NCBI GenBank assembly: GCA_002269645.1
Contig: NIVC01000521.1
Coordinates: forward strand, 124,001-188,000
DNA from: Macrostomum lignano
Lineage: Eukaryota
Length of the DNA stretch: 64,000 nt
Direction: 5' to 3'
Part shown: in pieces, positions 30,046 to 50,424 of the stretch
How positions within the stretch are numbered: the first letter of the stretch is position 1
Layout: each line of letters starts with the position of its first letter
Translations under genes and position numbers: made by a program
Notes under the pieces: generated by a model
Told to the model about the DNA's origin: nothing
Seen by the model: the letters and a program-made list of their open reading frames with translations, nothing else
Database searches by the model: none

Positions 30046-30708
30046 TCAACCAAGTCCGGCCTGCACAGTGTCCAGATCGCGAGCCAGAACGTTGGTCAGG
30101 CGGACCAGCTCGCCAACGGAGCGATGCTGCCCAGCCAGGTGAGTCATCACGGCATCGAGACTGGGGGCATCCAATAGCAGGCCGCCTGACGACGAGGCGG
30201 AGACGGCAACAGGCGCCGAGCCGCCGCCGGCGGAGTCCCGATCGGCCGGGCGGACGCCGAGTTTCACCTGGCTGGCGAGCTCGCGCAGCCGGCCAGTGGG
30301 CAGCTGGGTGAGCAGTTGCTCAACAGCGGACCGGAGCTGCTCCTCCCTGGGCAGCAGAGTCTGGCCCGGCCGCCTGGCCGACTCCTGGCGGCACAGCAGG
30401 CGGACGGCCCGGCGGCCGAGCTCCAGCTGGCGGCGCTTGGCCGCGTCCAGGCGAGCGGACGAGGCCGCCTGTTCAACCCGCAGCCGTTCGCAACGGGCTG
30501 CCAGCGTCCCTAGCAACCGTTGCTGGGCCTGGCACTGGGCTCGCTGTGCGGACATTCGGGCCTGCGCCTGCTCCAGGCCGACCAGAGGCACCGGCAGGAG
30601 CGACTCCGGGTCGGGGTTCTCGCGCCTGGCCTGCTGCCACACCATCAGCGGTACGCCGGCCGCTGGACGGTCCAGGTACTGCGTCAGCTGGTCCCGGCTG
30701 GGCCGCGT
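30046..30708 (-). CDS. NUP54: Nucleoporin Nup54 coding exon 3 (TRPSRDQLTQYLDRPAAGVPLMVWQQARRENPDPESLLPVPLVG... coiled coils)
   Basis: Aligns with the Nup54 motif P-aG-v-p-iW-QA--dNPD-e-liPVp-vGf. CTGCAG acceptor, phase 0; TGA at 30046. Confidence 0.9.
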   Translation of the reverse strand, partial: TRPSRDQLTQYLDRPAAGVPLMVWQQARRENPDPESLLPVPLVGLEQAQARMSAQRAQCQAQQRLLGTLAARCERLRVEQAASSARLDAAKRRQLELGRRAVRLLCRQESARRPGQTLLPREEQLRSAVEQLLTQLPTGRLRELASQVKLGVRPADRDSAGGGSAPVAVSASSSGGLLLDAPSLDAVMTHLAGQHRSVGELVRLTNVLARDLDTVQAGLG

Positions 30709-30789
30709 CTGCAGCGATGGGGGCGGGTTAGGCTTAGGCTTAGGTTAGGGACAGGCGCTGTCAAAGGCGGGCATGAAGCGACTCTTGGA

Positions 30790-31370
30790 GGTTTGAATGC
30801 GATTGTCAGGGGTTTGAATGCGATTGTCAGGGGTTTGAATGCGATTGTCAGGGGTTTGAATGCGATTGTCAGGGGTTTGAATGTGATTTTCAGGGGTTTG
30901 AATGTGATTTTCAGGGGTTTGAATGCGATTGTCAGGGGTTTGAAGCGATTGTCAGGGGTTTGAAGCGATTGTCAGGGGTTTGAAGCGATTGTCAGGGGTT
31001 TGAAGCGATTGTCAGGGGTTTGAAGCGATTGTCAGGGGTTTGAAGCGATTGTCAGGGGTTTGAATGCGATTGTCAGGGGCGTGTTTAAAGCGATTGTCAT
31101 GGGCGGGTTTGAAGCAATTGTCAGGGGTTTGAATGCGATTGTCAGGGGTTTGAATGCGATTGTCAGGGGTTTGAAGCGATTGTCAGGGGTTTGAAGCGAT
31201 TGTCAGGGGTTTGAAGCGATTGTCAGGAGTTTAAAGCGATTGTCAGGGGGTTGAATGCGATTGTCAGGGGTTTGAAGCGATTGTCAGGGGTTTGAAGCGA
31301 TTGTCAGGGGTTTGAAGCGATTGTCAGGGGTTTGAATGCGATTGTCAGGGGTTTGAAGCGATTGTCAGAG
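30790..31370. repeat. 20/21-bp minisatellite GCGATTGTCAGGGGTTTGAA(T) in NUP54 intron 2
   Basis: Tandem copies. Confidence 0.95.
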
Positions 31371-31468
31371 GCGGGTTGGGAAAAGTTTTGGGCGATTTGA
31401 AGCAGATTATTGGCCGATCCTTAAGCTGTAAACATTGTTATTATTAGAAAAGCATCAGAGTCGCTTAC

Positions 31469-31879
31469 CAGAGCCTGCACAGCGGTGACCTGCAGTTGAG
31501 TAGACAGCTGCTGTTTGTTCATTGGCTGGGACAGATAGGCAGCCAGCTCGGTGCTGAGAATCCGCCTGGCGCCGCCAGTCGGCAGCTGCTCGCGAATGTA
31601 CACCACCAACTGGCAGAGCTTCTCGCCCAGCGCTCGAATCTCTTCAATATGCGGCGTCAAATTGGGCTTGTTGCCTAGCAACCGAAATAGCGCGTCCTTG
31701 ACGCCGGTCTCGGCAATCTCGGTGGCCGCTTTGGTCACCGTCAGGCCGACCAGGCCGTCCTCATCTTTGGCGGCTGGCAGGGCGTTGTAGCAGACGGATT
31801 TCAGCCGGCAGAACGGGTTTCCCGGCTGGTACTCCACGGGGCCCTGCGAGCAAAAACCTTTGCCGGCGCCCCACTGCGC
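31469..31879 (-). CDS. NUP54: Nup54 coding exon 2 (AQWGAGKGF...NPFCRLKSVCYN...KDEDGLV...)
   Basis: Continues WNQLQ|AxWGxGKG; CCGCAG acceptor; CTG|GTAAGC donor. Confidence 0.9.
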
Positions 31880-31959
31880 CTGCGGAGGGTGCGAGTATGG
31901 GGACAACTTCCTGTAGTGGGGATTTTACACATTTTGGTTGTTAATTTTATGCGAATGGC

Positions 31960-33100
31960 TTGCCAATCTAGCTTCCGGTCATTGGGATGTTTGGCAACAT
32001 AGCTTCCGGTCATTGGGATGTTTGGCAACATAGCTTCCGGTCATTGGAATGCTTGTCAATCTAGCTTTCGGTCATTGGGATGCTTGCCAATCTAGCTTCC
32101 GGTCATTGGGATCCTTGTAAATCTAGCTTCCGGTCATTGGGATGTCTGTCAATCTAGCTTCCGGCTATTGGGATTCTTTTAAATGTAGCTTCCAGTCATT
32201 GGGATCCTTGTAAATCTAGCTTCCGGTCATTGGGATGTCTGTCAATCTAGCTTCCGGCTATTGGGATTCTTTTAAATGTAGCTTCCAGTCATTGGGATCC
32301 TTGTAAATCTAGCTTCCGGTCATTGGGATGTCTGTCAATCTAGCTTCCGGTTATTGGGATGCTTTTAAATGTAGCTTCCGGTCATTGGGATCCTTGTAAA
32401 TCTAGCTTCCGGTTATTGGAATGTCTGTCAATCTAGCTTCCGGTCATTGGGATGTCTGTCAATCTAGCTTCCGGATTCTTTTAAATGTAGCTTCCGGTCA
32501 TTGGGATCCTTGTAAATCTAGCTTCCGGTTATTGGGATATCTGTCAATCTAGCTTCCGGTCATTGGGATGCTTGTCAATCTAGCTTCCGGTCATTGGGAT
32601 GTCTGTCAATCTAGCTTCCGGTTATTGGGATGCTTTTAAATGTAGCTTCCGGTCATTGGGATCCTTGTAAATCTAGCTTCCGGTTATTGGAATGTCTGTC
32701 AATCTAGCTTCCGGTCATTGGGATGTCTGTCAATCTAGCTTCCGGATTCTTTTAAATGTAGCTTCCGGTCATTGGGATCCTTGTAAATCTAGCTTCCGGT
32801 TATTGGGATATCTGTCAATCTAGCTTCCAATCATTGGGATGTATGTCAATCTAGCTTCTGGTCATTGGGATCTCTGTCAATCTAGCTTCCGGTCATTGGG
32901 ATGTATGTCAATCTAGCTTCTGGTCATTGGGATGTCTGTCAATCTAGCTTCTGGTCATTGGGATCCTTGTAAATCTAGCTTCCGGTTATAGGAATGTCTG
33001 TCAATCTAGCTTCTGGTCATTGGGATGTCTGTCAATCTAGCTTCCGGTTATTGGGAAGCTTGTTAATACAGCTTCAGGTTATTAAGATGAGCTGGAAATT
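31960..33100. repeat. 31-bp minisatellite CTAGCTTCCGGTCATTGGGATGTCTGTCAAT in NUP54 intron 1
   Basis: Tandem copies. Confidence 0.95.
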
Positions 33101-33177
33101 AGCTTCCGGTCAAAAGGTTCGTCAAGACAGTTGGTCAGAATTGTACATCAACTTCCGGTAGCGCAGATAAATCACAC

Positions 33178-33876
33178 CTGCAGTTGATTCCACCGGGCCA
33201 GCACGGAGTCCCGCTCGTCAGGAAACAGCGCCGGCTGAGTCAGACTAGCAAAGAAAGCCACGCTGCTCGCGGCGGAGGCCGCAGCCGACGTAGCAACTCC
33301 GGCAGGCGCCGCCGCAGTCTGGCCAAAGGCGCCAAGCGTGAACTTACCGGCCGCGCCAAATCCGGCGCCAAATGAGGCGGCGGAAGAGACGGCGGCGCCG
33401 GCCGGTTTGCCAAATCCAAACGGTGCCGAAGTTGCGGCGCCGCCCGCCGGAGCGGGGAACGCGAAACCGGAAGTGGCAGCAGAGGCGGCCGGTGCGGCAA
33501 ATCCGAAACCGGAAGTGGCCGTAGAGGCGGACGGTGCGGCAAATCCGAAACCAGAAGTGGCCGTAGAGGCGGACGGTGCGGCAAATCCGAAACCGGAAGT
33601 GGCCGTAGAGGCGGCCGGTGCGGCAAATCCGAAACCGGAAGTGGCCGTAGAGGCGGCCGGTGCGGCAAATCCGAAACCGGAAGTGGCAGTCGTGGCGGCA
33701 GGTGCGGAAAATCCAAAACCAGATGTGGCCGTAGAAGCAGCCGGTGCGGCAAACCCGAAACCGGATGTGGCGGTGGTGGCAGCGGTTGGGAAGCTGAACG
33801 CAGATGTTGTAGCAGCGGCAGGCGCCGCGCTGGCGCCGAAGTTGAAAGTGGAGCCGCTAGAAGTGCCGCCGAACAT
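33178..33876 (-). CDS. NUP54: Nup54 coding exon 1 (FG-repeat region through DERDSVLARWNQLQ)
   Basis: FG/GFGF repeats and the Nup54 signature DERDxxLAxWNQLQ; donor CAG|GTGTGA. The joined CDS is 1773 nt (590 aa). Confidence 0.92.
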
Positions 33877-34644
33877 GGCCGATAAAAGTTAAATGCGGGT
33901 GTCTGAATCGAATCTTTGTCCTTGATTAACTACTTGGATTAGTTCAAACTGAGGCTGAAATGAAAGGCAATGTTGGCATAGTAAAATTAATTTTTTAGCC
34001 TATTAGCAAACCTATCAGACTTTTTACTTTGGCAGAAATGGCTGCATCGATAGAAAAATGAGATAAAAATAAACGCAAAGTAATGTATAGAAAACAGCGC
34101 AGGGTGGTTAAAAATGCCACTTAGTTATTGCAGATTGCAAATATTTCATTACAAATATTGCAATGAAAATAATGAATTAATTCTTTTTATGACAAGGCCA
34201 CTCGTAATTTCCTACTTGATACGCAATTTAAGTAGTTAGTAGGACGAGAAATGTCGGAAATAAAATATGAGATCATGAAAATTGCTAATAATAAACTAGA
34301 GATGTCGGCTAAACCGACATGTATAGAAACAATATCAAACAGCGAATAGGCAAATTCTTTTACTGTAACAAAGAATATTACAAACTAACAAACAAATCGG
34401 CAACTTTATTAACTACTTAAAGTAGGAAAATGACTCAAATATATTGAGATAATTGTAAAAATTGCACCAATGTTTTGAATGACAAAAAGCAAATTTAATG
34501 TAAACAATAGACTACAGTAGGCGACAAAGAATATACATAAAAATGCTAAGTTACTTTTTTGAAGCTTTCGCAGGCTAATAAAGATTTTGAAGTAGAAATG
34601 CACACAAAAAGCAAAGTATAATGCTATAAATTTGGCAAATTAAG

Positions 34645-34820: not shown

Positions 34821-34919
34821 TGTCATCTAACGGTGACGCAGAAGCAAGAGTCCTGGGGAATGCTATAAAAGTTCCCATTTGACAAAGGACACAAACAAAG
34901 CGCCAAGGAGGCCGCAGTT

Positions 34920-35462
34920 TTAAAACAATTCTTCAGCCGGAGTATTAGAAAACCAAAGCTTGCTAAGCTGATCGTAGCCGATGTACAGGCGGCCCAGCTG
35001 GTCCCGTTCCACCGGGTACATTCGCAGACGCAAGTCGGTACGAGAACTGGGCGAATGAATCTCGCCATTGGCAAACAGATTAAACGTATAGCCGTGCCAC
35101 GGACAGCGCAGCAGACAGTCGCCATTGTAGTCGTTAACCAGCTGGCCAAAGTTCATCGGCCCGCCGGCGTGGGGACAGCGAAGGTCGCAGGCGAAGGCCG
35201 CATCCCCAATGCGCAGCAAAGCCAGCTCCATGCCGTTCTGGCGCACCGTGTCGCATAGCGGCGGCCTGGCCGACCTATGCCGGGCCAGCGTTGCCATGGT
35301 AACCGGTTTCGGTGCGCTTGACGAGGAAGCTGAGAGACTGGGCGGCAGCGGAGCCCGACCGTCAGGGCTGTCAACAGTGATTACAGTGGGCAGCAGGTCT
35401 TTCAGGTCGTCGAACAGCAAGTCCGGCAGCAGCATGAAGATTCGCTGATTCAGTAGGACCGC
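34920..35462 (-). CDS. Rieske [2Fe-2S] domain protein (RFESD-like), terminal exon
   Basis: CPHAGG and CPWHGYTFNL provide the CxH...CxxH Rieske ligands. CCACTGCAG acceptor at 35463, in frame with the ORF at 35435. Confidence 0.88.
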   Translation of the reverse strand, partial: AVLLNQRIFMLLPDLLFDDLKDLLPTVITVDSPDGRAPLPPSLSASSSSAPKPVTMATLARHRSARPPLCDTVRQNGMELALLRIGDAAFACDLRCPHAGGPMNFGQLVNDYNGDCLLRCPWHGYTFNLFANGEIHSPSSRTDLRLRMYPVERDQLGRLYIGYDQLSKLWFSNTPAEELF

Positions 35463-35474
35463 CTGCAGTGGGAG

Positions 35475-35770
35475 AATTGGGGATCAGTTGCAGAATGGGG
35501 ACGGGGATCAGTTGCAGGATGGGGATTGGGGATCAGTTGCAGGATAAGGATTGGGGATCAGTTGCTGGATAAGGATTGGGGATCAGTTGCAGGATGGGGA
35601 CGGGGATCAGTTGCAGAATGGGGACGGGGATCAGTTGCAGGATGGGGATTGGGGATCAGTTGCAGGATGGGGATTGGGGATCAGTTGCAGGATAAGGATT
35701 GGGGATCAGTTGCAGGATGGGGATTGAGAATCAGTTGCAGGATAAGGATTGGGGATCATTTTGCAGGATG
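35475..35770. repeat. 24/25-bp minisatellite GGGGATCAGTTGCAGGAT... filling intron 2 of the Rieske gene
   Basis: Tandem copies. Confidence 0.9.
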
Positions 35771-35781
35771 GTAAATGGTAC

Positions 35782-36307
35782 CTCGTCAACGCGACAATCG
35801 CTCAGCGGCCGCTCTACAATGCTCAGCCGTCGCCTCCGCCGCTGCCACCGAGGCGTCCGCATCTGCTGACGCACCAGAAAAGGCGAATAGGCGATGCCAG
35901 GCAAGATTTTCTCGCCGCCAGCGTACGGCGTCAGCTGCGTCAACGGCTGGTAGCGCTCCGGCTCCGGGTGCGCGCGCGGCGCCTCATCGTCATCATAATC
36001 GTCATCGTCATTGTCGTTTGCATTGGCGTCGGCCACGGACTCGGCCAGTTGAACTTCGCGCAGAGTCCAGCCGGCGTAGGGCACGAGTTCGCGCGGCCGG
36101 CCACTGGCGGCCGACAGTCCGGCGGCCAAGTCGGCGGCCGAGGCGTCCGCGGCGGCTACGGCGACAGCGGCCGAGCGCTCGGCCATTAGGTGACGCCGGC
36201 GAGCCTCGTCAGGCGCCGGCAGGCGCACCGGCAGGAGGCGGACGCCGGCGACATCGGCAGCGTAGCCGATGGGCTGCGGATAGGCCGCCATGGCGATGCC
36301 CGGCGGG
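35782..36307 (-). CDS. Rieske-domain protein, predicted middle exon (PPGIAMAAYPQP...ELVPYAG...LTPYAG...RVDE)
   Basis: TCTTGCTCTCCCAG acceptor (phase 2) and GAG|GTACCA donor (phase 0) join in frame to both neighbouring exons; GC-rich coding-like composition. Confidence 0.7.
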
Positions 36308-36459
36308 CTGGGAGAGCAAGACGGGGAGAATTGGCTGGTTCGAATATTCCAGCATCTATGCTGAACTGACACAGTGCGCATGAGGGCGAATGCGCGTAGG
36401 CAGTAGCTTGCAATTTAAAAAAGCGTGCAGTTAAACAAGATGGTAGCTATTTGTAAAGG

Positions 36460-36870
36460 CGCGCAGACAGTAAGCGCGCATAGGTAGAAGCGCGCAGACA
36501 GTAAGCGCGCGCATAGGTAGAAGCGCGCAGACAGTAAGCGCGCAGACAGTAAGCGCGCAGACAGTAAGCGCGCGCATAGGTAGAAGCGCGCAGACAGTAA
36601 GCGCGCGCATAGGTAGAAGCGCGCAGACAGTAAGCGCGCGCATAGGTAGAAGCGCGCAGACAGTAAGCGCGCAGACAGTAAGCGCGCAGACAGTAAGCGC
36701 GCAGACAGTAAGCGCGCAGACAGTAAGCGCGCGCATAGGTAGAAGCGCGCAGACAGTAAGCGCGCGCATAGGTAGAAGCGCGCAGACAGTAAGCGCGCGC
36801 ATAGGTATAAGCGCGCAGACAGTAAGCGCGCATAGGTAGATGCGCGCAGACAGTAAGCGCGCATAAGGTT
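36460..36870. repeat. 15/18-bp composite minisatellite (AGCGCGCAGACAGTA / AGCGCGCGCATAGGTAGA) in intron 1 of the Rieske gene
   Basis: Tandem copies. Confidence 0.92.
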
Positions 36871-36977
36871 ACAAGTAGAAGCGCAGCAATGAAGCGCGCA
36901 GGCATAAGGTGCAAAGCATAGCCGAAAGCAACGGTACAAAAAGTGAGTAGCACGTCTCCCGAAATATATTAGCTCAC

Positions 36978-37798
36978 CATTCACGATCGATATCTGGCTT
37001 TCTAGACTGAGATTTCCTCTTATTGTTAGTTTTATTGTCAGGGGACTTGACCAGTCTAGCCCTAGTCGAATAAGCGGCAGTCAGCATCGCCTCGTCGTCT
37101 TCATCATCCTCGACTTCAGCTTCCTCTTCTTCTTCTACGCCTTCCAGATGCATCGGCATCGACATGAGGTTGGACGAGCCGACGCCAGACAGTGGCAGCT
37201 GAGAGGTCAATGGCTGAGCAGCGGCGGCGGGAACAGAAGGAATAGTTTTAGCCGCTCCAGCGTAGGGCGCCAGCTCGTCAGCGGCCAGCCCGCTAGCCCT
37301 GGCCCTGACCAGCTGTTCGATCCGTTCGTCAAGCGCAGCCGTGACCGAGTCCGATTTGATTTCTTCATCATCAGCGGACAGCAGGGAGCTGGCGGAGACG
37401 GACTGTCGGCAGCCGGGCAGCGGTTCGAGTTTCCACCACCAGTCTGAGCAGCTGGACGAGTTCAAAGCCGCGTCATCCTGAGATGGAGACGGCTGAGACA
37501 GATGCTCCCAGCAGCCGGAATCGACAGTCCTGAGCCGGACAGCGCAGGGTATGGATGTGACGCAGCCCGAATAAGTTGGCACTCCGGCAAGCGGCTGGTA
37601 GGCAACGGCGGCCACAACTGGCGGCGGCTCCGAGTGCCACTGCTTCTTGGCGCCGTCTATCGCGCTTAAATCGCTTAGCAGGCGATAGCCGCCAGATCCG
37701 GAATGATGATGAGGCGGCTTGACCGGATGCTGATGAGTCAAACCAGACAGATGCGATGCAGCTTCGCTTGGATTCTTTGCTAAACTGATTGACAGCAT
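36978..37798 (-). CDS. Rieske-domain protein, predicted first coding exon (MLSISLAKNP...ELAPYAG...DIDRE), low complexity
   Basis: Long open frame; strong donor ATG|GTGAGC at 36977 (phase 2); acceptor-like CCCTGTCAG at 37852 upstream. The joined CDS is 1890 nt (629 aa). Confidence 0.65.
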
Positions 37799-38144
37799 TC
37801 TGTTTCTGCAAAGATGCCAAGGGTCAGTTGGAAACTGTTGGTAGTCCAAAGCTGACAGGGGATGCCGCTATCTTAGGCTGTGTTTTTTGCTTTTAAACAT
37901 CATTTTCAGTAGGACACTAACAACAGTGACTGCACAAGGCCAAAATTTTTGTTGCCTAAATAGATAGCTACCAAGTTACTAAATAAATAGAAACTAACAA
38001 AATAACAAAAATCATAATACGAAGCCACATAATACAGATATATCATTATAGTTCAGAGTAATAGTTTGATTATCAACAGACAAAGACATTTACAGCTTTA
38101 GATGTTTCATTATAGAAGTTGAAAAAACCACAGCAGCGCATGTA

Positions 38145-38600
38145 TTAAGCCGAAGGAGCTTTTTTATTAACACTGTGCGTCTGCTGATTCTGTTGCTGAG
38201 ACTGTTGCTGCTTCTGCTGTTGCGGTTGCTGCTGCGGTTGGAAATGCGGCGAAGGAAACAAAGCCGACCATTCCTTGAGCAGGGCGTCAACTCGTTGCCG
38301 TTGAAACACGCTGCTCTCCTTCTTGATACCGCCGCCAGTTCCGGTCGCTTTGCCAGCAGCAGCGGTGGCGGCGGCTGTTGAGGCGCCAGAAGCGGCACCA
38401 GAAGAGTCGCCCTGACCGCTGCCAGGCGTGGCCCAGCTGTAGCCTGTGTCCGGATGGTGCCTAACAATGCTATTTAAGGAGTTGAACGCGCACTGCAAGT
38501 GATATGTAGTTGTTAACAGGCGCGAGTTGAACAGGGAACCAAGGTCCGGTGCAGCGTGCACTACACCGTTGATGATGTAGTACAGAGACTGCGGTATCAC
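38145..38600 (-). CDS. MED6: Mediator subunit 6 coding exon 2 (VIPQSLYYIINGVVHAAPDLGSLFNSRL...RHHPDTGYSW...FQRQRVDALL)
   Basis: MED6 motifs YYII-G---APDL and FQRQRVDALL; CCCGCAG acceptor. Confidence 0.93.
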   Translation of the reverse strand: MIPQSLYYIINGVVHAAPDLGSLFNSRLLTTTYHLQCAFNSLNSIVRHHPDTGYSWATPGSGQGDSSGAASGASTAAATAAAGKATGTGGGIKKESSVFQRQRVDALLKEWSALFPSPHFQPQQQPQQQKQQQSQQQNQQTHSVNKKAPSA

Positions 38601-38689
38601 CTGCGGGTTTTGTTTGCACCATTTAACCTTCATTTCTTAATCGGCATTACTCACTTACCTTCCCTGTAAGGTGAGGGTACGGAGACTTA

Positions 38690-39300
38690 CCTGTACCCTC
38701 ACCTTCCCAATACCCTCACCTTCCCAATACCCTCACCTTCCCTGTACCCTCACCTTCCCTGTACCCTCACCTTCCCTGTACCCTCATTTTTCCTACACCC
38801 TCACCTTCCCTGTACCCTCATTTTTCCTACACCCTCACCTTCCCTGTACCCTCATTTTTCCTACACCCTCACCTTCCCTGTACCCTCATTTTCCCTACAC
38901 CCTCACCTTCCCAATACCCTCACCTTCTCCGTACCTCAGTACCCTCATTTTTCCTACACCCTCACCTTCCCTGTACCCTCATTTTTCCTACACCCTCACC
39001 TTCCCTGTACCCTCATTTTCCCTACACCCTCACCTTCCCTGTACCCTCATTTTTCCTACACCCTCACCTTCCCTGTACCCTCATTTTCCCTACACCCTCA
39101 CCTTCCCAATACCCTCACCTTCTCCGTACCCTCACTTTCCCAATACCCTCATTTCCCTAAACCCTCACCTTCCCTACACCCTCACCTTCCCTATACCCTC
39201 ACCCATATTCCCTTCTCCTTCCCTATACCCTCACCTTCCCTATACCCTCACCCATATTCCCTATACCTATTCCCTATACCCATACCTTCATTACACCCTT
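38690..39300. repeat. 17-bp-based minisatellite CCCTCACCTTCCCTGTA / CCCTCATTTTTCCTACA in the MED6 intron
   Basis: Tandem copies of two alternating related units. Confidence 0.9.
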
Positions 39301-39422
39301 AATTTACACTTTCACATTCCTTATACCCTCATTTTCACTACACTCATCTTAGAATCTCGGTTTTTCCTCCTGCAGTAGCTGCTATGATTCATTACATAAT
39401 TTTACAATCCACTAGCTTTTAC

Positions 39423-39710: not shown

Positions 39711-39764
39711 CGGGCTCGGGGTTGAAGGATGCTGCAGCGGGGCAGAGAGTGTGCGGGGTGGCTG

Positions 39765-40335: not shown

Positions 40336-40349
40336 CCTTATTAAATCAA

Positions 40350-41337: not shown

Positions 41338-41419
41338 CTGGGCGGAAAGGGGGGTGAAGCCGTTTTTTGGAGGTGTAAACTAGTCACGCTGAGCTTCATT
41401 TACTCGGTAGATAGTTGTA

Positions 41420-41790
41420 GCTTGTAGTAGTAGTAGTAGTAGTAGTAAAAGTAGTAGTAGTAGTAGTAGTAGTAGTAAAAGTAGTAGTAGTAGTTAGTAG
41501 TAGTAGTAGTTGAAGATGTAGTAGTAGTAGTAGTAGTTAGTAGTAGTAGTAGCAGTAGTAGTAGTAGTAGTAGTTGAAGATGTAGTAGTAGTAGTAGTAG
41601 TTAGTAGTAGTAGTAGCAGTAGTAGTAGTAGTAGTAGTAGTAGTAGTTGAAGATGTAGTAGTAGTAGTAGTAGTAGTTAGTAGTAGTAGATGTAGTAGTA
41701 GTAGTAGTAGTAGTTGTAGTAAGAGTAGTAGTAGCAGTATTCGTAGTAGTAGTAATAGTAGTAGTAGTAGTAGCAGTAGTAGTAGACTGC
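41420..41790. repeat. (TAG)n microsatellite in SerRS intron 2
   Basis: About 370 bp of TAG repeats with interruptions. Confidence 0.97.
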
Positions 41791-41819
41791 GCAAAATGAT
41801 TAATCCGCTAATCTCATAC

Positions 41820-42077
41820 CTTAGTAAACTGCGGCACGCGGTACATGGCGTCCTCAACTTTAGAGATCTCCCGTCTGTAGCAGCGTGACACGGCGCAGAG
41901 GCGCACAGGCAGCTGGTCAATACGGTAGACGCGGCCAGCCAGGTAACCGGCCAGAGCTATCTCTGCCGTGCCAATCAGTGCCATGGAGCCAGTTAAAAAT
42001 ACCTGCGACCTGGTGCCTTGAGTCACAAAGCCGCACGCGTCAACCAGCTCCGGCGGGACCAGTTCGGGCACGCCAAT
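41820..42077 (-). CDS. SARS2: Mitochondrial SerRS exon 2 (IGVPELVPPELVDACGF...LIGTAEIALAG...LPVRLCAVSRCYRRE...YRVPQFTK)
   Basis: GTAE serine-binding motif and motif 2; TTTTACCAG acceptor; AAG|GTATGA donor. Confidence 0.92.
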
Positions 42078-42244
42078 CTGGTAAAAGCGATGTAAATATT
42101 GTATCCCGTAGAAATATACTAGCGATACTACTTTCAAAAATACAAGTAGCAAGTAGCGAAATGCTTACTTAAATAAGCATTTTTAAGAAAGCAATTTTAG
42201 ACTAATTTCGTTGAAATCTTTTCTTGGCGATTCTATTTAGCATG

Positions 42245-43665
42245 GATTCTAGAAGCTTGGGATTATTGGGGGATTCTAGAAACTTGGGATTATCGGGGGA
42301 TTCTAGAAGCTTGGGATTATTGGGGGATTCTAGAAGCTTGGGATTATCGGGGGATTCTAGAAACTTGGGATTATTGGGGGATTCTAGAAGCTTGGGATTA
42401 TCGGGGGATTCTAGAAACTTGGGATTATCGGGGGATTCTAGAAGCTTGGGATTATCGGGGGATTCTAGAAACTTGGGATTATTGGGGGATTCTAGAAACT
42501 TGGGATTATTGGGGGATTCTAGAAACTTGGGATTATCGGGGGATTCTAGAAACTTGGGATTATCGGGGGATTCTAGAAGCTTGGGATTATCGGGGGATTC
42601 AAGAAACTTGGGATTATTGGGGGATTTTAGAAACTTGGGATTATCGGGGGATTCTAGAAACTTGGGATTATTGGGGGATTCTAGAAACTTGGGATTATCG
42701 GGGGATTCTAGAAACTTGGGATTATCGGGGGATTCTAGAAGCTTGGGATTATCGGGGGATTCAAGAAACTTGGGATTATCGGGGGATTCTAGAAACTTGG
42801 GATTATTGGGGGATTCAAGAAACTTGGGATTATCGGGGGATTCTAGAAACTTGGGATTATTGGGGGATTCTAGAAGCTTGGGATTATCGGGGGATTCAAG
42901 AAACTTGGGATTATCGGGGGATTCTAGAAACTTGGGATTATTGGGGGATTCAAGAAACTTGGGATTATCGGGGGATTCTAGAAACTTGGGATTATTGGGG
43001 GATTCTAGAAGCTTGGGATTATCGGGGGATTCAAGAAACTTGGGATTATCGGGGGATTCTAGAAACTTGGGATTATTGGGGGATTCTAGAAGCTTGGGAT
43101 TATCGGGGGATTCAAGAAACTTGGGATTATCGGGGGATTCTAGAAGCTTGGGATTATTGGGGGATTCTAGAAGCTTGGGATTATCGGGGGATTCTAGAAA
43201 CTTGGGATTATTGGGGGATTCTAGAAGCTTGGGATTATCGGGGGATTCTAGAAACTTGGGATTATTGGGGATTCTAGAAGCTTGGGATTATCGGGGGATT
43301 CTAGAAACTTGGGATTATTGGGGGATTCTAGAAACTTGGGATTATTGGGGGATTCTAGAAGCTTGGGATTATCGGGGGATTCTAGAAGCTTGGGATTATC
43401 GGGGGATTCTAGAAGCTTGGGATTATCGGGGGATTCTAGAAACTTGGGATTATCGGGGGATTCTAGAAGCTTGGGATTATCGGGGGGATTCTAGAAGCTT
43501 GGGATTATCGGGGGATTCTAGAAGCTTGGGATTATCGGGGGATTCTAGAAACTTGGGATTATCGGGGGATTCTAGAAGCTTGGGATTATCGGGGGGATTC
43601 TAGAAGCTTGGGATTATCGGGGGGATTCTAGAAGCTTGGGATTAGCGGGGGATTCTAGAAGCTCG
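42245..43665. repeat. 27-bp minisatellite GATTCTAGAAGCTTGGGATTATCGGGG in SerRS intron 1
   Basis: About 50 tandem copies; explains the GDSRSLGLS pseudo-ORF. Confidence 0.97.
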
Positions 43666-43749
43666 TGATTGAGAAATTCTAGAATGCGATTATAAAATTT
43701 AAAAAGAAATCAAACGCATAAATAAAAACAAATAATTAAAAATGACTAC

Positions 43750-44316
43750 CTGCTGAAAGCCGAACTCCCGAGCAACATCCAGCGCTAGTCCAATCAACGC
43801 AGTTTCTAACTGTGCTAACTGGCCTCTAAAATAGTGAGTCCGTTGGCCAGTCAGCAAGGACAGATTTCTGGACGCCAACAATCTCAGATTCTGCAACAGA
43901 GTGCGCGCGTCAAAGCCGCGCCGCTCCTCAGTCGATGGCGCTGTGCCAATCAGGCGAACCAGCCGGCTGTTGGCCTCGCCGCCAACGGGCGAGTCCGGGT
44001 GAGTCCAGTTCGGCAAGCGGGCCGCTGCCGCCACCGCCGCGGCGCCGTCCGACGACTCGGCGCGTAAACGCAGCGCCGCGTCAACTAAATCGGGATCGGC
44101 GCCGCGTTGGCGCGCATTTTGGCGCGCGGCCGCCGCACGGACGGGATCTGACAGGCTTTCCCAATCGATCTGCGGTTCGAAGAACGGCGCGGATTTGGGA
44201 GCGTCAGGATTCTTGGCTGGCCGGTGCTCAACGCTGCTAGGGGTGCAGCAGCCACTGAGCCAACGGCTGCCGCGGGTCAGCACGGCCTGGCACAGGCGCC
44301 GGTGTAGGTGCGGCAC
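43750..44316 (-). CDS. SARS2: Mitochondrial SerRS exon 1 (Arg-rich leader, IDW...NARQRG...LPNWTHPDSPVG...motif 1); 5' boundary uncertain (GTG at 44316 or acceptor at 44287|44286)
   Basis: LPNxTHPxxPVG motif; GQRTHYFRGQLAQLETALI (motif 1 region); donor CAG|GTAGTC. No in-frame ATG. Confidence 0.85.
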
Positions 44317-44361
44317 TGACGCCAGCGGTTGAGGCAGCGGAGAGCAAATGAGGGCTTCTAG

Positions 44362-47300
44362 CCGTCTAATGCTGTTTGTTTACTGTCTAATGCTGTTTGT
44401 TTACTGTCTAATGCTGCTTATTTACTGTCTAATGCTGTTTGTTTACTGTCTAATGCTGTTTGTTTACAGCCTAATGCTGTTTCTTTACTGTCTAATGCTG
44501 TTTCTTTACAGCCTAATGCTGTTTCTTTACTGTCTAATGCTGTTTGTTTAAAGCCTAATGCTGTTTCTTTACTGTCTAATGCTGTTTGTTTACAGCCTAA
44601 TGTTGTTTCTTTACTGTCTAATGCTGTTTGTTTACTGTCTAATGCTGTTTGTTTACTGTCTAATGCTGTTTCTTTACTGTCTAATGCTGTTTCTTTACAG
44701 CCTAATGCTGTTTATTTACTGTCTAATCCTGCTTCTTTACAGCCTAATGCTGTTTCTTTACTGTCTAATGCTGTTTGTTTACAGCCTAATGCTGTTTGTT
44801 TACTGTCTAATGCTGTTTGTTTACTGTCTAATGCTGTTTGTTTACTGTCTAATGCTGTTTGTTTACTGTCTAATCCTGCTTCTTTACAGCCTAATGCTGT
44901 TTCTTTACTGTCTAATGCTGTTTCTTTACAGCCTAATGCTGTTTCTTTACTGTCTAATGCTGTTTGTTTACAGCCTAATGCTGTTTGTTTACAGCCTAAT
45001 GCTGTTTGTTTACAGCCTAATGCTGTTTCTTTACTGTCTAATGCTGTTTGTTTACAGCCTAATGTTGTTTCTTTACTGTCTAATGCTGTTTGTTTACTGT
45101 CTAATGCTGTTTGTTTACTGTCTAATGCTGTTTGTTTACTGTCTAATGCTGTCTGTTTACTGTCTAATGCTGCTTCTTTACTGTCTAATGCTGTTTCTTT
45201 ACAGCCTAATGCTGTTTGTTTACTGTCTAATGCTGTTTGTTTACTGTCTAATGCTGCTTCTTTACTGTCTAATGCTGTTTGTTTACAGCCTAATGCTGTT
45301 TCTTTACAGCCTAATGCTGTTTGTTTACAGCCTAATGCTGTTTCTTTACTGTCTAATGCTGTTTATTTACTGTCTAATGCTGTTTCTTTACAGCCTAATG
45401 CTGTTTGTTTACTGTCTAATGCTGTTTGTTTACTGTCTAATGCTGCTTCTTTACTGTCTAATGCTGTTTGTTTACAGCCTAATGCTGTTTCTTTACTGTC
45501 TAATGCTGTTTCTTTACAGCCTAATGCTGTTTCTTTACTGTCTAATGCTGTTTGTTTACAGCCTAATGCTGTTTGTTTACTGTCTAATGCTGTTTGTTTA
45601 CAGCCTAATGCTGTTTGTTTACTGTCTAATGCTGTTTGTTTACTGTCTAATGCTGTTTGTTTACTGTCTAATGCTGTTTGTTTACTGTCTAATCCTGCTT
45701 CTTTACAGCCTAATGCTGTTTCTTTACTGTCTAATGCTGTTTCTTTACAGCCTAATGCTGTTTCTTTACTGTCTAATGCTGTTTCTTTACTGTCTAATGC
45801 TGTTTATTTACTGTCTAATGCTGTTTCTTTACAGCCTAATGCTGTTTCTTTACTGTCTAATGCTGTTTGTTTACTGTCTAATGCTGTTTGTTTACTGTCT
45901 AATGCTGTTTGTTTACAGCCTAATGCTGTTTCTTTACAGCCTAATGCTGTTTGTTTACAGCCTAATGCTGTTTCTTTACAGCCTAATGCTGTTTATTTAC
46001 TGTCTAATGCTGTTTATTTACAGTTAACGCTGCTTCTTTACAGCCTAATGCTGTTTCTTTACTGTCTAATGCTGCTTCTTTACAGTCTAATGCTGCTTCT
46101 TTACTGTCTAATGCTGTTTGTTTACAGCCTAATGCTGTTTCTTTACTGTCTAATGCTGTTTGTTTACAGCCTAATGTTGTTTCTTTACTGTCTAATGCTG
46201 TTTGTTTACTGTCTAATGCTGTTTGTTTACTGTCTAATGCTGTTTCTTTACTGTCTAATGCTGTTTCTTTACAGCCTAATGCTGTTTATTTACTGTCTAA
46301 TGCTGTTTCTTTACAGCCTAATGCTGTTTCTTTACTGTCTAATGCTGTTTGTTTACAGCCTAATGCTGTTTGTTTACTGTCTAATGCTGTTTGTTTACTG
46401 TCTAATGCTGTTTGTTTACTGTCTAATCCTGCTTCTTTACAGCCTAATGCTGTTTCTTTACTGTCTAATGCTGTTTCTTTACAGCCTAATGCTGTTTCTT
46501 TACTGTCTAATGCTGTTTCTTTACTGTCTAATGCTGTTTGTTTACAGCCTAATGCTGTTTGTTTACAGCCTAATGCTGTTTCTTTACTGTCTAATGCTGT
46601 TTGTTTACTGTCTAATGCTGTTTGTTTACTGTCTAATGCTGTTTGTTTACTGTCTAATGCTGTCTGTTTACTGTCTAATGCTGCTTCTTTACTGTCTAAT
46701 GCTGTTTCTTTACAGCCGAATGCTGTTTGTTTACTGTCTAATGCTGTTTGTTTACTGTCTAATGCTGCTTCTTTACTGTCTAATGCTGTTTGTTTACAGC
46801 CTAATGCTGTTTCTTTACAGCCTAATGCTGTTTGTTTACAGCCTAATGCTGTTTCTTTACTGTCTAATGCTGTTTATTTACTGTCTAATGCTGTTTCTTT
46901 ACAGCCTAATGCTGTTTGTTTACTGTCTAATGCTGTTTGTTTACTGTCTAATGCTGTTTGTTTACAGCCTAATGCTGTTTCTTTACTGTCTAATGCTGTT
47001 TCTTTACAGCCTAATGCTGTTTCTTTACTGTCTAATGCTGTTTGTTTACAGCCTAATGCTGTTTGTTTACTGTCTAATGCTGTTTGTTTACTGTCTAATG
47101 CTGTTTGTTTACTGTCTAATGCTGTTTGTTTACTGTCTAATCCTGCTTCTTTACAGCCTAATGCTGTTTCTTTACTGTCTAATGCTGTTTCTTTACAGCC
47201 TAATGCTGTTTCTTTACTGTCTAATGCTGTTTCTTTACTGTCTAATGCTGTTTGTTTACAGCCTAATGCTGTTTGTTTACAGCCTAATGCTGTTTCTTTA

Positions 47301-49340
47301 CTGTCTAATGCTGTTTGTTTACAGCCTAATGTTGTTTCTTTACTGTCTAATGCTGTTTGTTTACTGTCTAATGCTGTTTGTTTACTGTCTAATGCTGTTT
47401 GTTTACTGTCTAATGCTGTCTGTTTACTGTCTAATGCTGTCTGTTTACTGTCTAATGCTGCTTCTTTACTGTCTAATGCTGTTTCTTTACAGCCTAATGC
47501 TGTTTGTTTACTGTCTAATGCTGTTTGTTTACTGTCTAATGCTGCTTCTTTACTGTCTAATGCTGTTTGTTTACAGCCTAATGCTGTTTCTTTACAGCCT
47601 AATGCTGTTTGTTTACAGCCTAATGCTGTTTCTTTACTGTCTAATGCTGTTTATTTACTGTCTAATGCTGTTTATTTACAGTTAACGCTGCTTCTTTACA
47701 GCCTAATGCTGTTTCTTTACTGTCTAATGCTGCTTCTTTACAGTCTAATGCTGCTTCTTTACTGTCTAATGCTGCTTCTTTACTGTCTAATGCTGCTTCT
47801 TTACTGTCTAATGCTGCTTCTTTACTGTCTAATGCTGCTTCTTTACTGTCTAATGCTGCTTCTTTACAGTCTAATGCTGCTTCTGTACAGCCTAATGCTG
47901 CTTCTTTACTGTCTAATGCTGCTTCTTTACAGCCTAATGCTGTTTCTTTACAGCCAAATGCTGCTTCTTTACAGCCTAATGCTGTTTCTTTACAGCCTAA
48001 TGCTGCTTCTTTACAGCCTAATGCTGTTTCTTTACTGTCTAATGCTGCTTCTTTACTGTCTAATGCTGCTTCTTTACAGTCTAATGCTGCTTCTTTACTG
48101 TCTAATGCTGCTTCTTTACTGTCTAATGCTGCTTCTTTACAGTCTAATGCTGCTTCTGTACAGCCTAATGCTGTTTCTTTACTGTCTAATGCTGCTTCTT
48201 TACTGTCTAATGCTGCTTCTTTACTGTCTAATGCTGTTTCTTTACTGTCTAATGCTGTTTCTTTACAGCCTAATGCTGTTTCTTTACAGTCTAATGCTGC
48301 TTCTTTACTGTCTAATGCTGTTTATTTACTGTCTAATGCTGTTTATTTACAGTTAACGCTGCTTCTTTACAGTCTAATGCTGCTTCTTTACTGTCTAATG
48401 CTGCTTCTTTACTGTCTAATGCTGCTTCTTTACTGTCTAATGCTGCTTCTTTACTGTCTAATGCTGCTTCTTTACTGTCTAATGCTGCTTCTTTACAGTC
48501 TAATGCTGCTTCTGTACAGCCTAATGCTGCTTCTTTACTGTCTAATGCTGCTTCTTTACAGCCTAATGCTGTTTCTTTACAGCCAAATGCTGCTTCTTTA
48601 CAGCCTAATGCTGTTTCTTTACAGCCTAATGCTGCTTCTTTACAGCCTAATGCTGTTTCTTTACTGTCTAATGCTGCTTCTTTACTGTCTAATGCTGCTT
48701 CTTTACAGTCTAATGCTGCTTCTTTACTGTCTAATGCTGCTTCTTTACTGTCTAATGCTGCTTCTTTACAGTCTAATGCTGCTTCTGTACAGCCTAATGC
48801 TGTTTCTTTACTGTCTAATGCTGCTTCTTTACTGTCTAATGCTGCTTCTTTACTGTCTAATGCTGTTTCTTTACTGTCTAATGCTGTTTCTTTACAGCCT
48901 AATGCTGTTTCTTTACAGTCTAATGCTGCTTCTTTACTGTCTAATGCTGTTTATTTACTGTCTAATGCTGTTTATTTACAGTTAACGCTGCTTCTTTACA
49001 GCCTAATGCTGTTTCTTTACTGTCTAATGCTGCTTCTTTACTGTCTAATGCTGTTTCTTTACTGTCTAATGCTGCTTCTTTACTGTCTAATGCTGCTTCC
49101 TTACTGTCTAATGCTGTTTCTTTACAGCCTAATGCTGTTTCTTTACAGTCTAATGCTGCTTCTTTACAGTCTAATGCTGCTTCTTTACTGTCTAATGCTG
49201 CTTCTTTACAGTCTAATGCTGCTTCTTTACTGTCTAATGCTGTTTCTTTACTGTCTAATGCTGCTTCTTTACAGTCTAATGCTGCTTCTTTACAGCCTAA
49301 TGCTGCTTCTTTACAGCCTAATGCTGTTTCTTTACTGTTT
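44362..49340. repeat. About 5-kb satellite of a 21-bp monomer CTGTCTAATGCTGTTT(G/C)TTTA with higher-order structure
   Basis: Roughly 235 monomers; explains the LMLFVYC pseudo-ORFs. Confidence 0.98.
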
Positions 49341-49711
49341 AATACTGCTCTTCACTTTTTTTTGCTGCATCTTGCTTTTTGATGCCGTTTCGAATGATTT
49401 TTCCACCACGTACAACTGGGATCGGATTAGTAAGTCAGGAGGACTTGCCCAGGTAGCAGGGCACCCAACAACTAAGAATCTGGGAGACTACAAAACTTAG
49501 ACCTGCTTATCTAGAAATTTGAAAAGCAACTATTCAGATTCTAAATTAAATAAATAATGAATAAACTTAATACTAAAACAGCAACAATCCGCCTTCCAAA
49601 GATAAAATACAATAGACCGAGCTTTATTGGTACATCAATAAAACATTAATATAAAATATACAATTCAGCAAAGCGAACAATAGTCAAAACTAGTGTAGGG
49701 ACGTCACTATA

Positions 49712-49905
49712 CAAGGGCTGTCAGAAAATTTCTGCTTATTGGTCTGTAAAGTACAAAGTAGTTATGTTAAAACGATACCCTCCAGAATCTATCACTAACT
49801 TTTCTCCATTAAAACAGCCGCAAGGACTAAGATCTGGCGAGTCCTTTTGAGATCTAAACAGACGGCGATACACACCAATAAGCAGAACTTTTCTGACAGC
49901 CCTCG
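49712..49905. mobile_element. Roughly 194-bp MITE with 28-bp imperfect TIRs (CAAGGGCTGTCAGAAAATTTCTGCTTAT), Tc1/mariner-like
   Basis: Inverted termini at 49712-49739 and 49878-49905; left flank TA, right flank TG (degenerate target-site duplication). Lies just downstream of the TSR2 stop. Confidence 0.65.
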
Positions 49906-49932
49906 TGACTAACTCTGCCCAGCTAACCCCAA

Positions 49933-50424
49933 TCAAGCGTGCACCCCGCCATAGTCTTGCTCATCTCCGCTGTCATCGCCACCGCCGTCCCCGTCGTCGG
50001 CATCATCGTCATCCTGGTGACTACTGGGCGCACTGACGCAGGCCTGCAGGCTGACGCCTCTGGCCAGGCGAGTCAGGGCGGCTTCAACGAATGCAGTCTC
50101 GCCTCGTCTCAGCCTCTCTAACAGGTCGCATAGTAGGCGGGCAACCTCGTAGCAACTGCCATCGTCAAATACACTGCTAAACAGCTCGTCAATGTACTGT
50201 TCAAGCACTTCGGCTAGTTCGTCTGGTGCCAGGGCGCTGTTCTCCAGCATCCAATGGCACACCGCCTGCTGCATCCAGTCCACCTTAGCCTGTGTGTCTG
50301 GCCCGCCAGCCTGGTGTTCCACTAAGAGTCTGACAGCTGTCCAAGGAGCAAATACGCGATGGACAACTGGCAGAAATTCTGCCTGGCTAACTGCCTGTTT
50401 GGAGGCTGATGAAGATGAGGCCAT
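49933..50424 (-). CDS. TSR2: Pre-rRNA-processing protein TSR2 homolog, single exon, 163 aa
   Basis: WGG-domain pattern F---V--VF--WTAVRLLVEHQAGG----K--W...DEL...DDGS--EVA--L and an acidic C-terminus. Confidence 0.9.
   Translation of the reverse strand: MASSSSASKQAVSQAEFLPVVHRVFAPWTAVRLLVEHQAGGPDTQAKVDWMQQAVCHWMLENSALAPDELAEVLEQYIDELFSSVFDDGSCYEVARLLCDLLERLRRGETAFVEAALTRLARGVSLQACVSAPSSHQDDDDADDGDGGGDDSGDEQDYGGVHA

What the first reader, a model, noticed from the sequence alone, without database searches (positions are those of the whole stretch)
30046..50424. Five co-directional housekeeping genes with acceptor sites just before the ATG: candidate SL-resolved operon
Seen: TSR2, SerRS, MED6, the Rieske gene and NUP54 are all on the minus strand with no opposite-strand gene between them. 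Acceptor-like AGs lie 21 nt (MED6, 39732), 53 nt (Rieske, 37852), about 27 nt (NUP54, 33903) and about 35-45 nt (TSR2) upstream of the ATG. Only about 290 bp, containing U-rich stretches, separate the MED6 stop (38145) from the Rieske acceptor. The SerRS-MED6 gap (about 1.1 kb) is mostly tandem array and SINE, and the Rieske-NUP54 gap is about 1 kb. ZC3H10 (2876) and PTEN (8487) show the same acceptor pattern. Established: polycistronic units resolved by SL trans-splicing occur in nematodes, flatworms and tunicates and are enriched in mitochondrial and RNA-processing genes. Inference: at least MED6-Rieske, and possibly the whole block, is polycistronic.
Basis: partly seen in the sequence, partly recalled or inferred. 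Interest (0 to 1): 0.72.

Follow-up and report, generated by a model that had tools for sequence, protein, structure and literature searches.

The report
Flatworm spliced-leader operon block, already annotated
Five same-strand housekeeping genes in the flatworm Macrostomum lignano fit that species' published pattern of spliced-leader trans-splicing and operons, so this is an ordinary, largely annotated example and not a discovery.

Summary
The window is Macrostomum lignano, assembly Mlig_3_7, contig NIVC01000521.1. It is 100% identical to that contig over every unique segment compared.

The five genes are real and all on the minus strand: TSR2, mitochondrial-type SerRS, MED6, a 629-aa protein with a C-terminal Rieske domain, and NUP54. 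No opposite-strand gene lies between them.

M. lignano is already known to trans-splice about 30% of its genes to one 35-nt leader ending in ATG. About 15% of its genes are placed in operons, whose spacers are often inflated by repeats.

After subtracting repeats, the four gaps here are 633, about 251, 339 and 796 nt. All are under the published 1-kb operon threshold.

GenBank locus tags carry transcriptional-unit prefixes. Across the three paralogous loci these prefixes link TSR2–SerRS, SerRS–MED6 and Rieske–NUP54.

The better Rieske and NUP54 acceptors are at 37806 and 33955. The TSR2 and SerRS 5' ends remain unresolved.

No reads were available, so co-transcription is inferred from the published annotation and not shown here.

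The parts
49933..50424 (-). TSR2 coding exon: single exon, 163 aa, first gene of the block.
   Evidence: Pfam WGG/TSR2, E 5e-21. The GenBank CDS on the same contig is identical apart from the first 3 residues (P0124).
50467..50468 (-). Candidate TSR2 acceptor AG (tattatcag|G), 42 nt before the ATG. Unconfirmed, and it does not match YTNCAG.
   Evidence: Sequence. Conserved in L001 and L002. The SL ATG would open only a 3-codon ORF. The annotated 5'-partial CDS begins 9 nt after the ATG, which does not fit this site.
50487..50574 (-). 5'-truncated copy of the SINE 3' tail, about 60-150 nt upstream of the TSR2 ATG.
   Evidence: Alignment with the SINE upstream of MED6.
44364..49347 (.). 21-nt minisatellite, about 237 copies, filling most of the TSR2-SerRS spacer.
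   Evidence: TRF. The TSR2-SerRS CDS gap, mostly this array, is about 1.5 kb in L001 and about 2.2 kb in L002.
40849..44315 (-). Mitochondrial-type SerRS. Exons 44315-43750, 42077-41820 and 41337-40849. The only CAG acceptor is gtcag| (AG at 44317-44316). Exon 1 has no in-frame ATG.
   Evidence: Pfam. Best PDB hits are mitochondrial SerRS, 1wle, E 4e-73. Gene model. GenBank CDS PAA81622.1 (Mlig004933g4) is 5'-partial.
40360..40650 (-). tRNA-derived SINE in the SerRS-MED6 spacer, in sense orientation.
   Evidence: A/B-box-like head and a tail shared with the TSR2-upstream copy.
39764..40338 (.). 34-nt tandem array (17 copies) abutting the SINE, ending 32 nt before the MED6 acceptor.
   Evidence: TRF.
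38145..39733 (-). MED6. Acceptor ctgcag| (AG at 39733-39732). Exon 1 is 39731-39423 with the ATG at 39710. Exon 2 is 38600-38145.
   Evidence: Pfam Med6 in both exons. Model. The site matches YTNCAG. The GenBank CDS 'PSPMAHS...' is open upstream of the ATG. The SL ATG would be in frame.
37806..38144 (-). MED6-Rieske spacer: 339 nt, repeat-free, with no GTRAG donor. The last ~200 nt are well conserved in paralog L002.
34920..37807 (-). Rieske-domain gene. Acceptor ttgcag| (AG at 37807-37806), 7 nt before the ATG at 37798. Exons 37805-36978, 36307-35782 and 35462-34920, giving 629 aa. A short 380-aa form starting at ATG 36381 is the one annotated at this locus.
   Evidence: In-frame splicing. 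GenBank models P0121 and P0135 (long) and P0136 (short). Acceptor conservation.
30046..33956 (-). NUP54. Best acceptor is tttcatttcag| (AG at 33956-33955), 78 nt before the ATG at 33876. Exons 33954-33178, 31879-31469 and 30708-30046, giving 590 aa.
   Evidence: Model equals GenBank PAA81619.1, Mlig022887g2. Motif and conservation.

Best explanation
The block lies on Macrostomum lignano contig NIVC01000521.1.

Proposed mechanism: the five genes are transcribed in one or two long precursor RNAs starting upstream of TSR2. Each mRNA is then released by 3'-end cleavage and polyadenylation of the upstream gene. The species' single 35-nt spliced leader (ending in AUG) is trans-spliced onto a CAG acceptor a few to ~80 nt before the next coding region.

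Best-supported units: TSR2-SerRS-MED6 and Rieske-NUP54. Whether MED6 and Rieske are also joined, making one five-gene operon, is open.

The minisatellites and the SINE sit inside the intercistronic or outron RNA and are simply discarded.

Shown here: gene identities, gene order, gap lengths, acceptor motifs and their conservation, and the public annotation's unit names.

Inferred: actual SL addition at each site, and co-transcription.
For: 1. Species identity: all unique segments are 100% identical to L003, and the proteins equal the GenBank entries on that contig.
2. Published biology of this species: one SL (CGGTCTCTTACTGCGAAGACTCAATTTATTGCATG); 30% of genes SL-spliced; 15% in operons of up to nine genes; repeat-adjusted spacers peaking near 100 bp with a 1-kb cut-off; trans-acceptor motif YTNCAG; enrichment in conserved genes (PMC8629364).
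3. Repeat-adjusted distances from stop codon to acceptor are 633, ~251, 339 and 796 nt.
4. Locus-tag prefixes name clusters of RNA-seq-assembled transcriptional units, which the TBONE pipeline cut at SL-read and poly(A) peaks (PMC5730564). Non-homologous neighbours share prefixes: TSR2+SerRS (Mlig004933 g2/g1), SerRS+MED6 (Mlig012582 g2/g5), and Rieske+NUP54 (Mlig014252 g1/g2, and Mlig022887 g1/g2 at this very locus).
5. YTNCAG sites lie at -21 (MED6), -7 (Rieske) and -78 (NUP54), each the last such site before its ATG. Five of the seven genes in the window have one within 80 nt, against ~0.1 expected per gene.
6. The -7 Rieske site is conserved while flanking sequence diverges. The L002 CDS begins at the first codon after it.
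7. No GTRAG donor lies on the sense strand of any gap, so the acceptors have no cis partner.
8. No gene lies on the other strand.
Against: - No SL-containing read, cap data or poly(A) data could be inspected.
- The locus-tag argument is indirect. Stranded RNA-seq assemblers that allow multi-mapping reads can bridge neighbouring genes through repeats. All three 'joined' gaps contain arrays or a SINE, while the one repeat-free gap (MED6-Rieske) is never joined. That pattern is also what an assembly artefact would give.
- TSR2 and SerRS have no YTNCAG site.
- The annotated 5'-partial CDS starts are offset from the predicted acceptors by -4 to +16 nt, and for TSR2 they fit no AG.
- Donor depletion is weak evidence: the antisense strand of the gaps has only one GTRAG as well.
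- The last ~200 nt of the MED6-Rieske spacer are conserved between paralogs, which could mark an internal promoter.
Confidence: 0.72

Rival explanations
1. Each gene, or most genes, has its own promoter. The pre-mRNAs are monocistronic with short outrons and are SL trans-spliced individually, as for about 60% of SL-spliced M. lignano genes. The shared transcriptional-unit names come from read-through or from repeat-derived multi-mapping reads bridging neighbours during assembly.
For: - Only 40% of SL-spliced genes are assigned to operons in this species.
- Joined units all cross arrays or a SINE, while the repeat-free MED6-Rieske gap is never joined.
- A conserved ~200-nt block lies upstream of the Rieske acceptor.
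- Spacers of 340-800 nt are well above the ~100-nt mode for operons.
Against: - Three independent junctions are joined across two or three paralogous loci.
- All gaps pass the published operon rule.
- The arrays begin only 32-48 nt upstream of the SerRS and MED6 acceptors, leaving little unique DNA for a promoter there.
- The authors report that units tend to split, not merge, in repeat-rich spacers.
Confidence: 0.2
2. The acceptors before the ATGs are ordinary cis-splice acceptors of 5'-UTR introns whose non-coding first exons lie upstream. No trans-splicing or operon is involved.
For: - Flatworm acceptors are often shared between cis- and trans-splicing (PMC12582326).
- Within the Rieske gene the exon-2 region is used in cis in the long form, yet is the 5' end of the short annotated form.
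Against: - No consensus GTRAG donor on the sense strand of any gap.
- The GenBank models have no upstream exons, and the CDSs run open to the transcript 5' ends.
- The species-specific trans-acceptor motif is present.
Confidence: 0.05

Closest known systems
Macrostomum lignano SL operons and transcriptional units (Wudarski et al. 2017, PMC5730564; Ustyantsev & Berezikov 2021, PMC8629364)
   Same: Same species and assembly. Same-strand conserved genes. Repeat-adjusted spacers under 1 kb. YTNCAG acceptors. Repeats inflate the spacers. Public locus tags already group neighbours into common transcriptional units.
   Different: This particular block is not singled out in the papers read. Its spacers (250-800 nt after adjustment) are longer than the ~100-nt mode. 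The MED6-Rieske link is not in the annotation.
Caenorhabditis elegans SL2-type operons
   Same: Polycistronic precursor. Upstream gene polyadenylated and downstream gene trans-spliced. Mostly 2-8 genes. Enriched in housekeeping, mitochondrial and RNA-processing genes.
   Different: C. elegans uses a specialised SL2 for downstream genes and has ~100-nt spacers. M. lignano has a single SL, so no SL type marks operon membership.
Operons of parasitic flatworms such as Schistosoma and Echinococcus (Calvelo et al. 2025, PMC12582326)
   Same: The SL ends in AUG. There is no SL specialisation. Acceptors are shared between cis and trans use. Chimeric gene models are taken as traces of polycistronic RNA; UniProt has such Rieske+NUP54 chimeras for this locus.
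   Different: The operon rule used there is a 300-bp spacer or less. Only by the looser M. lignano rule does this block qualify.

Membership tests
SL-resolved operon (operational definition for M. lignano, PMC8629364) | Adjacent genes on the same strand with no opposite-strand gene between them. | tested here: met
   Pfam and gene models. Annotation of three loci. No Pfam hit on plus-strand ORFs.
SL-resolved operon (operational definition for M. lignano, PMC8629364) | Repeat-adjusted intergenic distance below 1 kb. | tested here: met
   633, ~251, 339 and 796 nt from stop codon to predicted acceptor, after subtracting TRF arrays and the SINE. These are upper bounds, because 3' UTRs are included.
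SL-resolved operon (operational definition for M. lignano, PMC8629364) | The downstream gene carries the SL, shown by SL-containing reads ending at its acceptor. | not testable with these tools
   No reads were available. Indirect evidence only: YTNCAG sites for MED6, Rieske and NUP54; 5'-partial GenBank CDSs for SerRS, MED6 and Rieske; the L002 Rieske CDS starts exactly after ttgcag|.
SL-resolved operon (operational definition for M. lignano, PMC8629364) | One precursor RNA spans the neighbouring genes. | tested here: inconclusive
   Shared transcriptional-unit prefixes for TSR2+SerRS, SerRS+MED6 and Rieske+NUP54, but never for MED6+Rieske (naming rule). This is indirect, and bridging through repeats is not excluded.
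SL-resolved operon (operational definition for M. lignano, PMC8629364) | A single promoter upstream of the first gene and none inside the block. | not testable with these tools
   No CAGE, RAMPAGE or chromatin data. The 13 kb upstream of TSR2 is AT-rich, and its longest ORFs have no Pfam match.
SL trans-splicing acceptor (outron rule of Conrad et al. 1993, as cited in PMC8629364) | [quoted passage not shown] | tested here: met
   No GTRAG on the sense strand in 3,054 nt of gap sequence. The statistical weight is low, because the antisense strand is also nearly devoid of it.

The most novel reading that the evidence does not exclude
The mitochondrial SerRS gene has no AUG of its own in its first coding exon in any of the three assembled paralogs. 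It may depend entirely on the spliced leader's terminal AUG, or on a non-AUG codon, to start translation.

In this assembly no AG acceptor puts the SL AUG in frame. UniProt models from the older ML2 assembly read CAG where Mlig_3_7 reads CTG. That single difference would create an in-frame acceptor, ccgcag|CCT, giving M-PQPLASVPHLHRR..., a plausible mitochondrial presequence.

If real, an essential enzyme would be obligatorily SL-dependent for initiation, and some paralogs would be silenced by one acceptor mutation.
Probability: 0.3. Interest if true: 0.4.

Novelty: already known. Interest (0 to 1): 0.15.

Why it matters
It matters little as a discovery. SL trans-splicing and operons are published for this species, and this locus is already cut into trans-spliced genes in the public annotation.

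It does serve as a worked example in three ways:
- Intercistronic RNA in M. lignano tolerates kilobases of minisatellite and a SINE, with spacer length varying several-fold between paralogs.
- Acceptor guesses made from sequence alone can be corrected by comparing paralogs.
- The leader's AUG interacts differently with each gene. It is in frame for MED6 and ZC3H10. It gives short upstream ORFs for TSR2, PTEN and NUP54, and a long out-of-frame ORF for Rieske. It leaves no usable start for SerRS.

Tried and rejected
- Exact look-up of the 163-aa TSR2 found nothing. The GenBank CDS lacks the first three codons, so this did not mean the species was absent.
- A search with SerRS exon 3 returned only hits of 55% identity or less and missed the identical M. 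lignano entries. The organism was identified only with the Rieske-gene protein.
- Rfam found only tRNA-Ser. The SL sequence is not in the window, so there is no SL RNA gene here.
- I considered the repeated element upstream of TSR2 and MED6 as a possible SL RNA gene or shared promoter. It is a SINE tail.
- I considered ORF 37798-36974 as a separate gene, with a new gene starting at the ATG near 36291. This was rejected because GenBank models P0121 and P0135 splice exon 1 to ctcccag|CC.
- I tested whether the SL ATG is in frame for SerRS at each of the three upstream AGs. None is.
- Searches of two papers' supplements for the Mlig identifiers found nothing: no supplement was held for one paper and there were no matches in the other.
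- I tried to read transcript 5' ends from where the 5'-partial CDSs begin. The offsets from the acceptors are inconsistent, so only the L002 Rieske case was used.
- Canonical poly(A) hexamers are absent from the SerRS-MED6 and MED6-Rieske gaps, so 3' ends could not be placed.


Full report
WHAT THE SEQUENCE IS

- TSR2/WGG.
- Class II tRNA-synthetase core in two SerRS exons.
- Med6 in two exons.
- A Rieske [2Fe-2S] domain.
- Nup54.

The SerRS is the mitochondrial type. Its best solved relatives are bovine and human mitochondrial SerRS (1wle, E 4e-73).

A three-exon model of the 'Rieske' gene hit a GenBank protein of Macrostomum lignano at 94% identity over its full length. Fetching the contigs that encode the GenBank relatives gave three collinear loci from assembly GCA_002269645.1 (Mlig_3_7): L001, L002 and L003. 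The window is 100% identical to L003 (contig NIVC01000521.1) over every unique segment compared. It is 88-100% identical to the other two, which are paralogous or duplicated-chromosome copies. All loci keep the order TSR2, SerRS, MED6, Rieske, NUP54, followed by a convergent PTEN. None has an opposite-strand gene inside the block. Plus-strand ORFs in the block have no Pfam match.

GENE MODELS (window coordinates, minus strand)

- TSR2: 50424-49933, single exon.
- SerRS: 44315-43750, 42077-41820 and 41337-40849. This equals GenBank PAA81622.1 apart from the first two residues.
- MED6: ATG at 39710. Exons end at 39423 and run 38600-38145.
- Rieske-domain gene: ATG at 37798. Exons to 36978, 36307-35782 and 35462-34920, giving 629 aa. 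GenBank models on the paralogs use exactly this splicing ('...DIDRECPPGIAMAAYPQP'). At this locus only a 380-aa form starting at ATG 36381 is annotated.
- NUP54: 33876-33178, 31879-31469 and 30708-30046, giving 590 aa. This is identical to PAA81619.1.

WHAT IS KNOWN FOR THIS SPECIES

Wudarski et al. 2017 (PMC5730564):
- They assembled RNA-seq into 'transcriptional units'.
- About 7% of these were precursors with several trans-splice sites and two or more proteins.
- They cut the units into genes at SL-read peaks and poly(A) sites with their TBONE pipeline.
- Units clustering at 95% identity received the same name prefix.

Ustyantsev and Berezikov 2021 (PMC8629364):
- There is one 35-nt leader, CGGTCTCTTACTGCGAAGACTCAATTTATTGCATG.
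- 30% of genes are trans-spliced and 15% are in operons of up to nine genes.
- The trans-acceptor motif is [T/C]TNCAG, and the cis donor motif is GT[G/A]AG.
- Operon spacers are inflated by repeats. After subtracting repeats they peak near 100 bp, and 1 kb is the working threshold.
- Trans-spliced genes are enriched in conserved genes.

DOES THIS BLOCK FIT?

Spacers. Measured from each stop codon to the best downstream acceptor, the raw gaps are 5,617, 1,117, 339 and 965 nt. The repeats to subtract are:
- the 21-nt array at 44364-49347;
- the 34-nt array at 39764-40338;
- the SINE at about 40360-40650;
- the 27-nt array at 34651-34819.

This leaves 633, about 251, 339 and 796 nt, all under 1 kb. 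The TSR2-SerRS CDS gap, mostly the 21-nt array, is about 1.5 kb in L001 and about 2.2 kb in L002, against 5.6 kb here. Spacer length is evidently free to vary.

Acceptors. The published motif occurs at about 1.2-1.3 sites per kb per strand in unique intergenic DNA of the window. The chance of one falling within 80 nt of a given ATG is about 0.1. It is found at:
- -7 for Rieske (ttgcag|, AG at 37807-37806);
- -78 for NUP54 (tttcatttcag|, AG at 33956-33955);
- -27 for ZC3H10 (AG at 2875-2876);
- -51 for PTEN (AG at 8486-8487).

That is five of seven genes, with a binomial P of about 3e-4 (my calculation).

The 40 nt ending in ttgcag|AAACAGAATG are identical. The L002 GenBank CDS begins 'NRM...', the first full codon after that acceptor. 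In L002 an in-frame TGA lies 39 nt upstream of the ATG, so a transcript starting further upstream would have been called complete.
Only 33955 has a pyrimidine tract and matches the motif.

TSR2 and SerRS have no motif match. Their best candidates are tattatcag| (50468-50467) and gtcag| (44317-44316).

No consensus donor (GTRAG) lies on the sense strand of any spacer. This is the condition for an acceptor to be used in trans. The antisense strand is almost as poor in GTRAG, so the point is weak.

Public annotation. GenBank locus tags:
- This contig: SerRS Mlig004933g4, MED6 Mlig012582g5, Rieske Mlig022887g1, NUP54 Mlig022887g2.
- L002's contig: TSR2 Mlig004933g2, SerRS Mlig004933g1, MED6 Mlig012582g1, Rieske Mlig014252g1, NUP54 Mlig014252g2.
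- L001's contig: TSR2 Mlig026491g1, SerRS Mlig012582g2, MED6 Mlig012582g5, Rieske Mlig014252g3.

A prefix names a cluster of near-identical transcriptional units. Two unrelated genes can therefore share a prefix only if some assembled unit spans both. This last step is my inference from the naming rule. It links TSR2-SerRS, SerRS-MED6 and Rieske-NUP54. MED6 and Rieske never share a prefix.

UniProt also holds chimeric Rieske+NUP54 models from the older assembly (P0122, P0139). Calvelo et al. treat chimeric gene models as traces of polycistronic RNA. Here the chimeras run into implausible frames, so they count for little.

CAVEATS

- I could not look at reads.
- The three junctions that are joined all contain arrays or a SINE, and the assembly allowed multi-mapping reads. 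The one repeat-free junction is the one not joined. This pattern would also arise if repeats artificially bridged independent transcripts.
- The last ~200 nt of the MED6-Rieske spacer are much better conserved between paralogs than its middle. That could mark a promoter or outron signals.
- Annotated 5'-partial CDS starts lie -4 to +16 nt from the predicted acceptors. For TSR2, which begins 9 nt after its ATG in all three loci, they match no AG. I could not explain this and did not lean on it, apart from the clean L002 Rieske case.

MECHANISM AND ODDS

- Most likely (about 0.7): at least part of the block is polycistronic and resolved by SL trans-splicing. The supported units are TSR2-SerRS-MED6 and Rieske-NUP54.
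- A single five-gene operon is possible, perhaps even odds given the above. Under the published distance rule the block would be classed that way.
- Independent promoters with individually trans-spliced transcripts remain a real alternative (about 0.2).
- Cis-spliced 5'-UTR introns are unlikely (about 0.05).

THE LEADER'S AUG

All reported flatworm leaders end in AUG, which can serve as a start codon (Cheng et al. 2006, as cited in PMC12582326). With the predicted acceptors:
- It is in frame and open for MED6 (adding MHPSTPSP) and for ZC3H10.
- It gives short upstream ORFs for TSR2 (3 codons), PTEN (7) and NUP54 (22).
- It gives a 111-codon out-of-frame ORF for Rieske.
- It gives a 13-codon out-of-frame ORF for SerRS.

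SerRS exon 1, about 190 codons, has no in-frame ATG in any of the three paralogs. Its GenBank CDSs are all 5'-partial. None of the three upstream AGs puts the SL AUG in frame. UniProt models from the older ML2 assembly read ...SPQPQP... where this assembly reads ...SPLPQP..., that is CAG versus CTG. CAG would create the acceptor ccgcag|CCT, exactly in frame. This is unresolved and is the most interesting loose end.

VERDICT

Noticed in passing
window 44315-43750 (SerRS exon 1); L001 3440-4005; L002 ~4630-5195: The mitochondrial SerRS has no in-frame ATG anywhere in its first coding exon in all three paralogs, and no upstream AG puts the spliced leader's ATG in frame. UniProt models from the older assembly read CAG (Q) where this assembly reads CTG (L) at about window 44341-44339, which would create an in-frame acceptor.
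   Followed up: partly
L002 1911-1913 (paralog of window 50424-50422): The TSR2 start codon is AAG instead of ATG in paralog L002, although the gene is annotated there. GenBank TSR2 CDSs in all three loci are 5'-partial and begin 9 nt after the ATG position.
   Followed up: partly
window 36406-36307 and ATG 36381: The Rieske-domain gene has two annotated forms. One is a long three-exon form (paralogs). The other is a 380-aa form starting inside the region of exon 2 (this locus). This suggests an acceptor region used both in cis and as a transcript 5' end.
   Followed up: partly
window 28869-28950 (+): A tRNA-Ser(GCT) gene sits in the spacer between the convergent NUP54 and PTEN genes.
   Followed up: no
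window 40360-40650 and 50487-50574 (-): A tRNA-derived SINE lies upstream of MED6. A 5'-truncated copy of its ~90-110-nt tail lies about 60 nt upstream of the TSR2 ATG. Both are in the sense orientation of the genes.
   Followed up: partly
whole window, e.g. 44364-49347, 42244-43660, 39764-40338, 38686-39252, 36459-36863, 31960-33112, 30790-31368: Nearly every intron and spacer holds a different minisatellite with a 15-46-nt unit. The paralogous loci differ several-fold in length across these arrays while exons stay 97.6-100% identical.
   Followed up: partly
window 2877, 8488, 50466, 39731, 33954 (predicted first exon bases): The distance from predicted acceptor to ATG is a multiple of three in five of six genes (27, 51, 42, 21 and 78 nt; Rieske is 7). 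This puts the leader's ATG in the same frame as the gene's ATG, although three of the five have an intervening stop. This is a post hoc observation and may be coincidence.
   Followed up: no
UniProt A0A1I8FQA2 (P0122) and A0A1I8I6U8 (P0139): Older-assembly gene models fuse the Rieske gene with NUP54 and then run into implausible frames. They are mis-annotations that may stem from polycistronic RNA evidence.
   Followed up: partly
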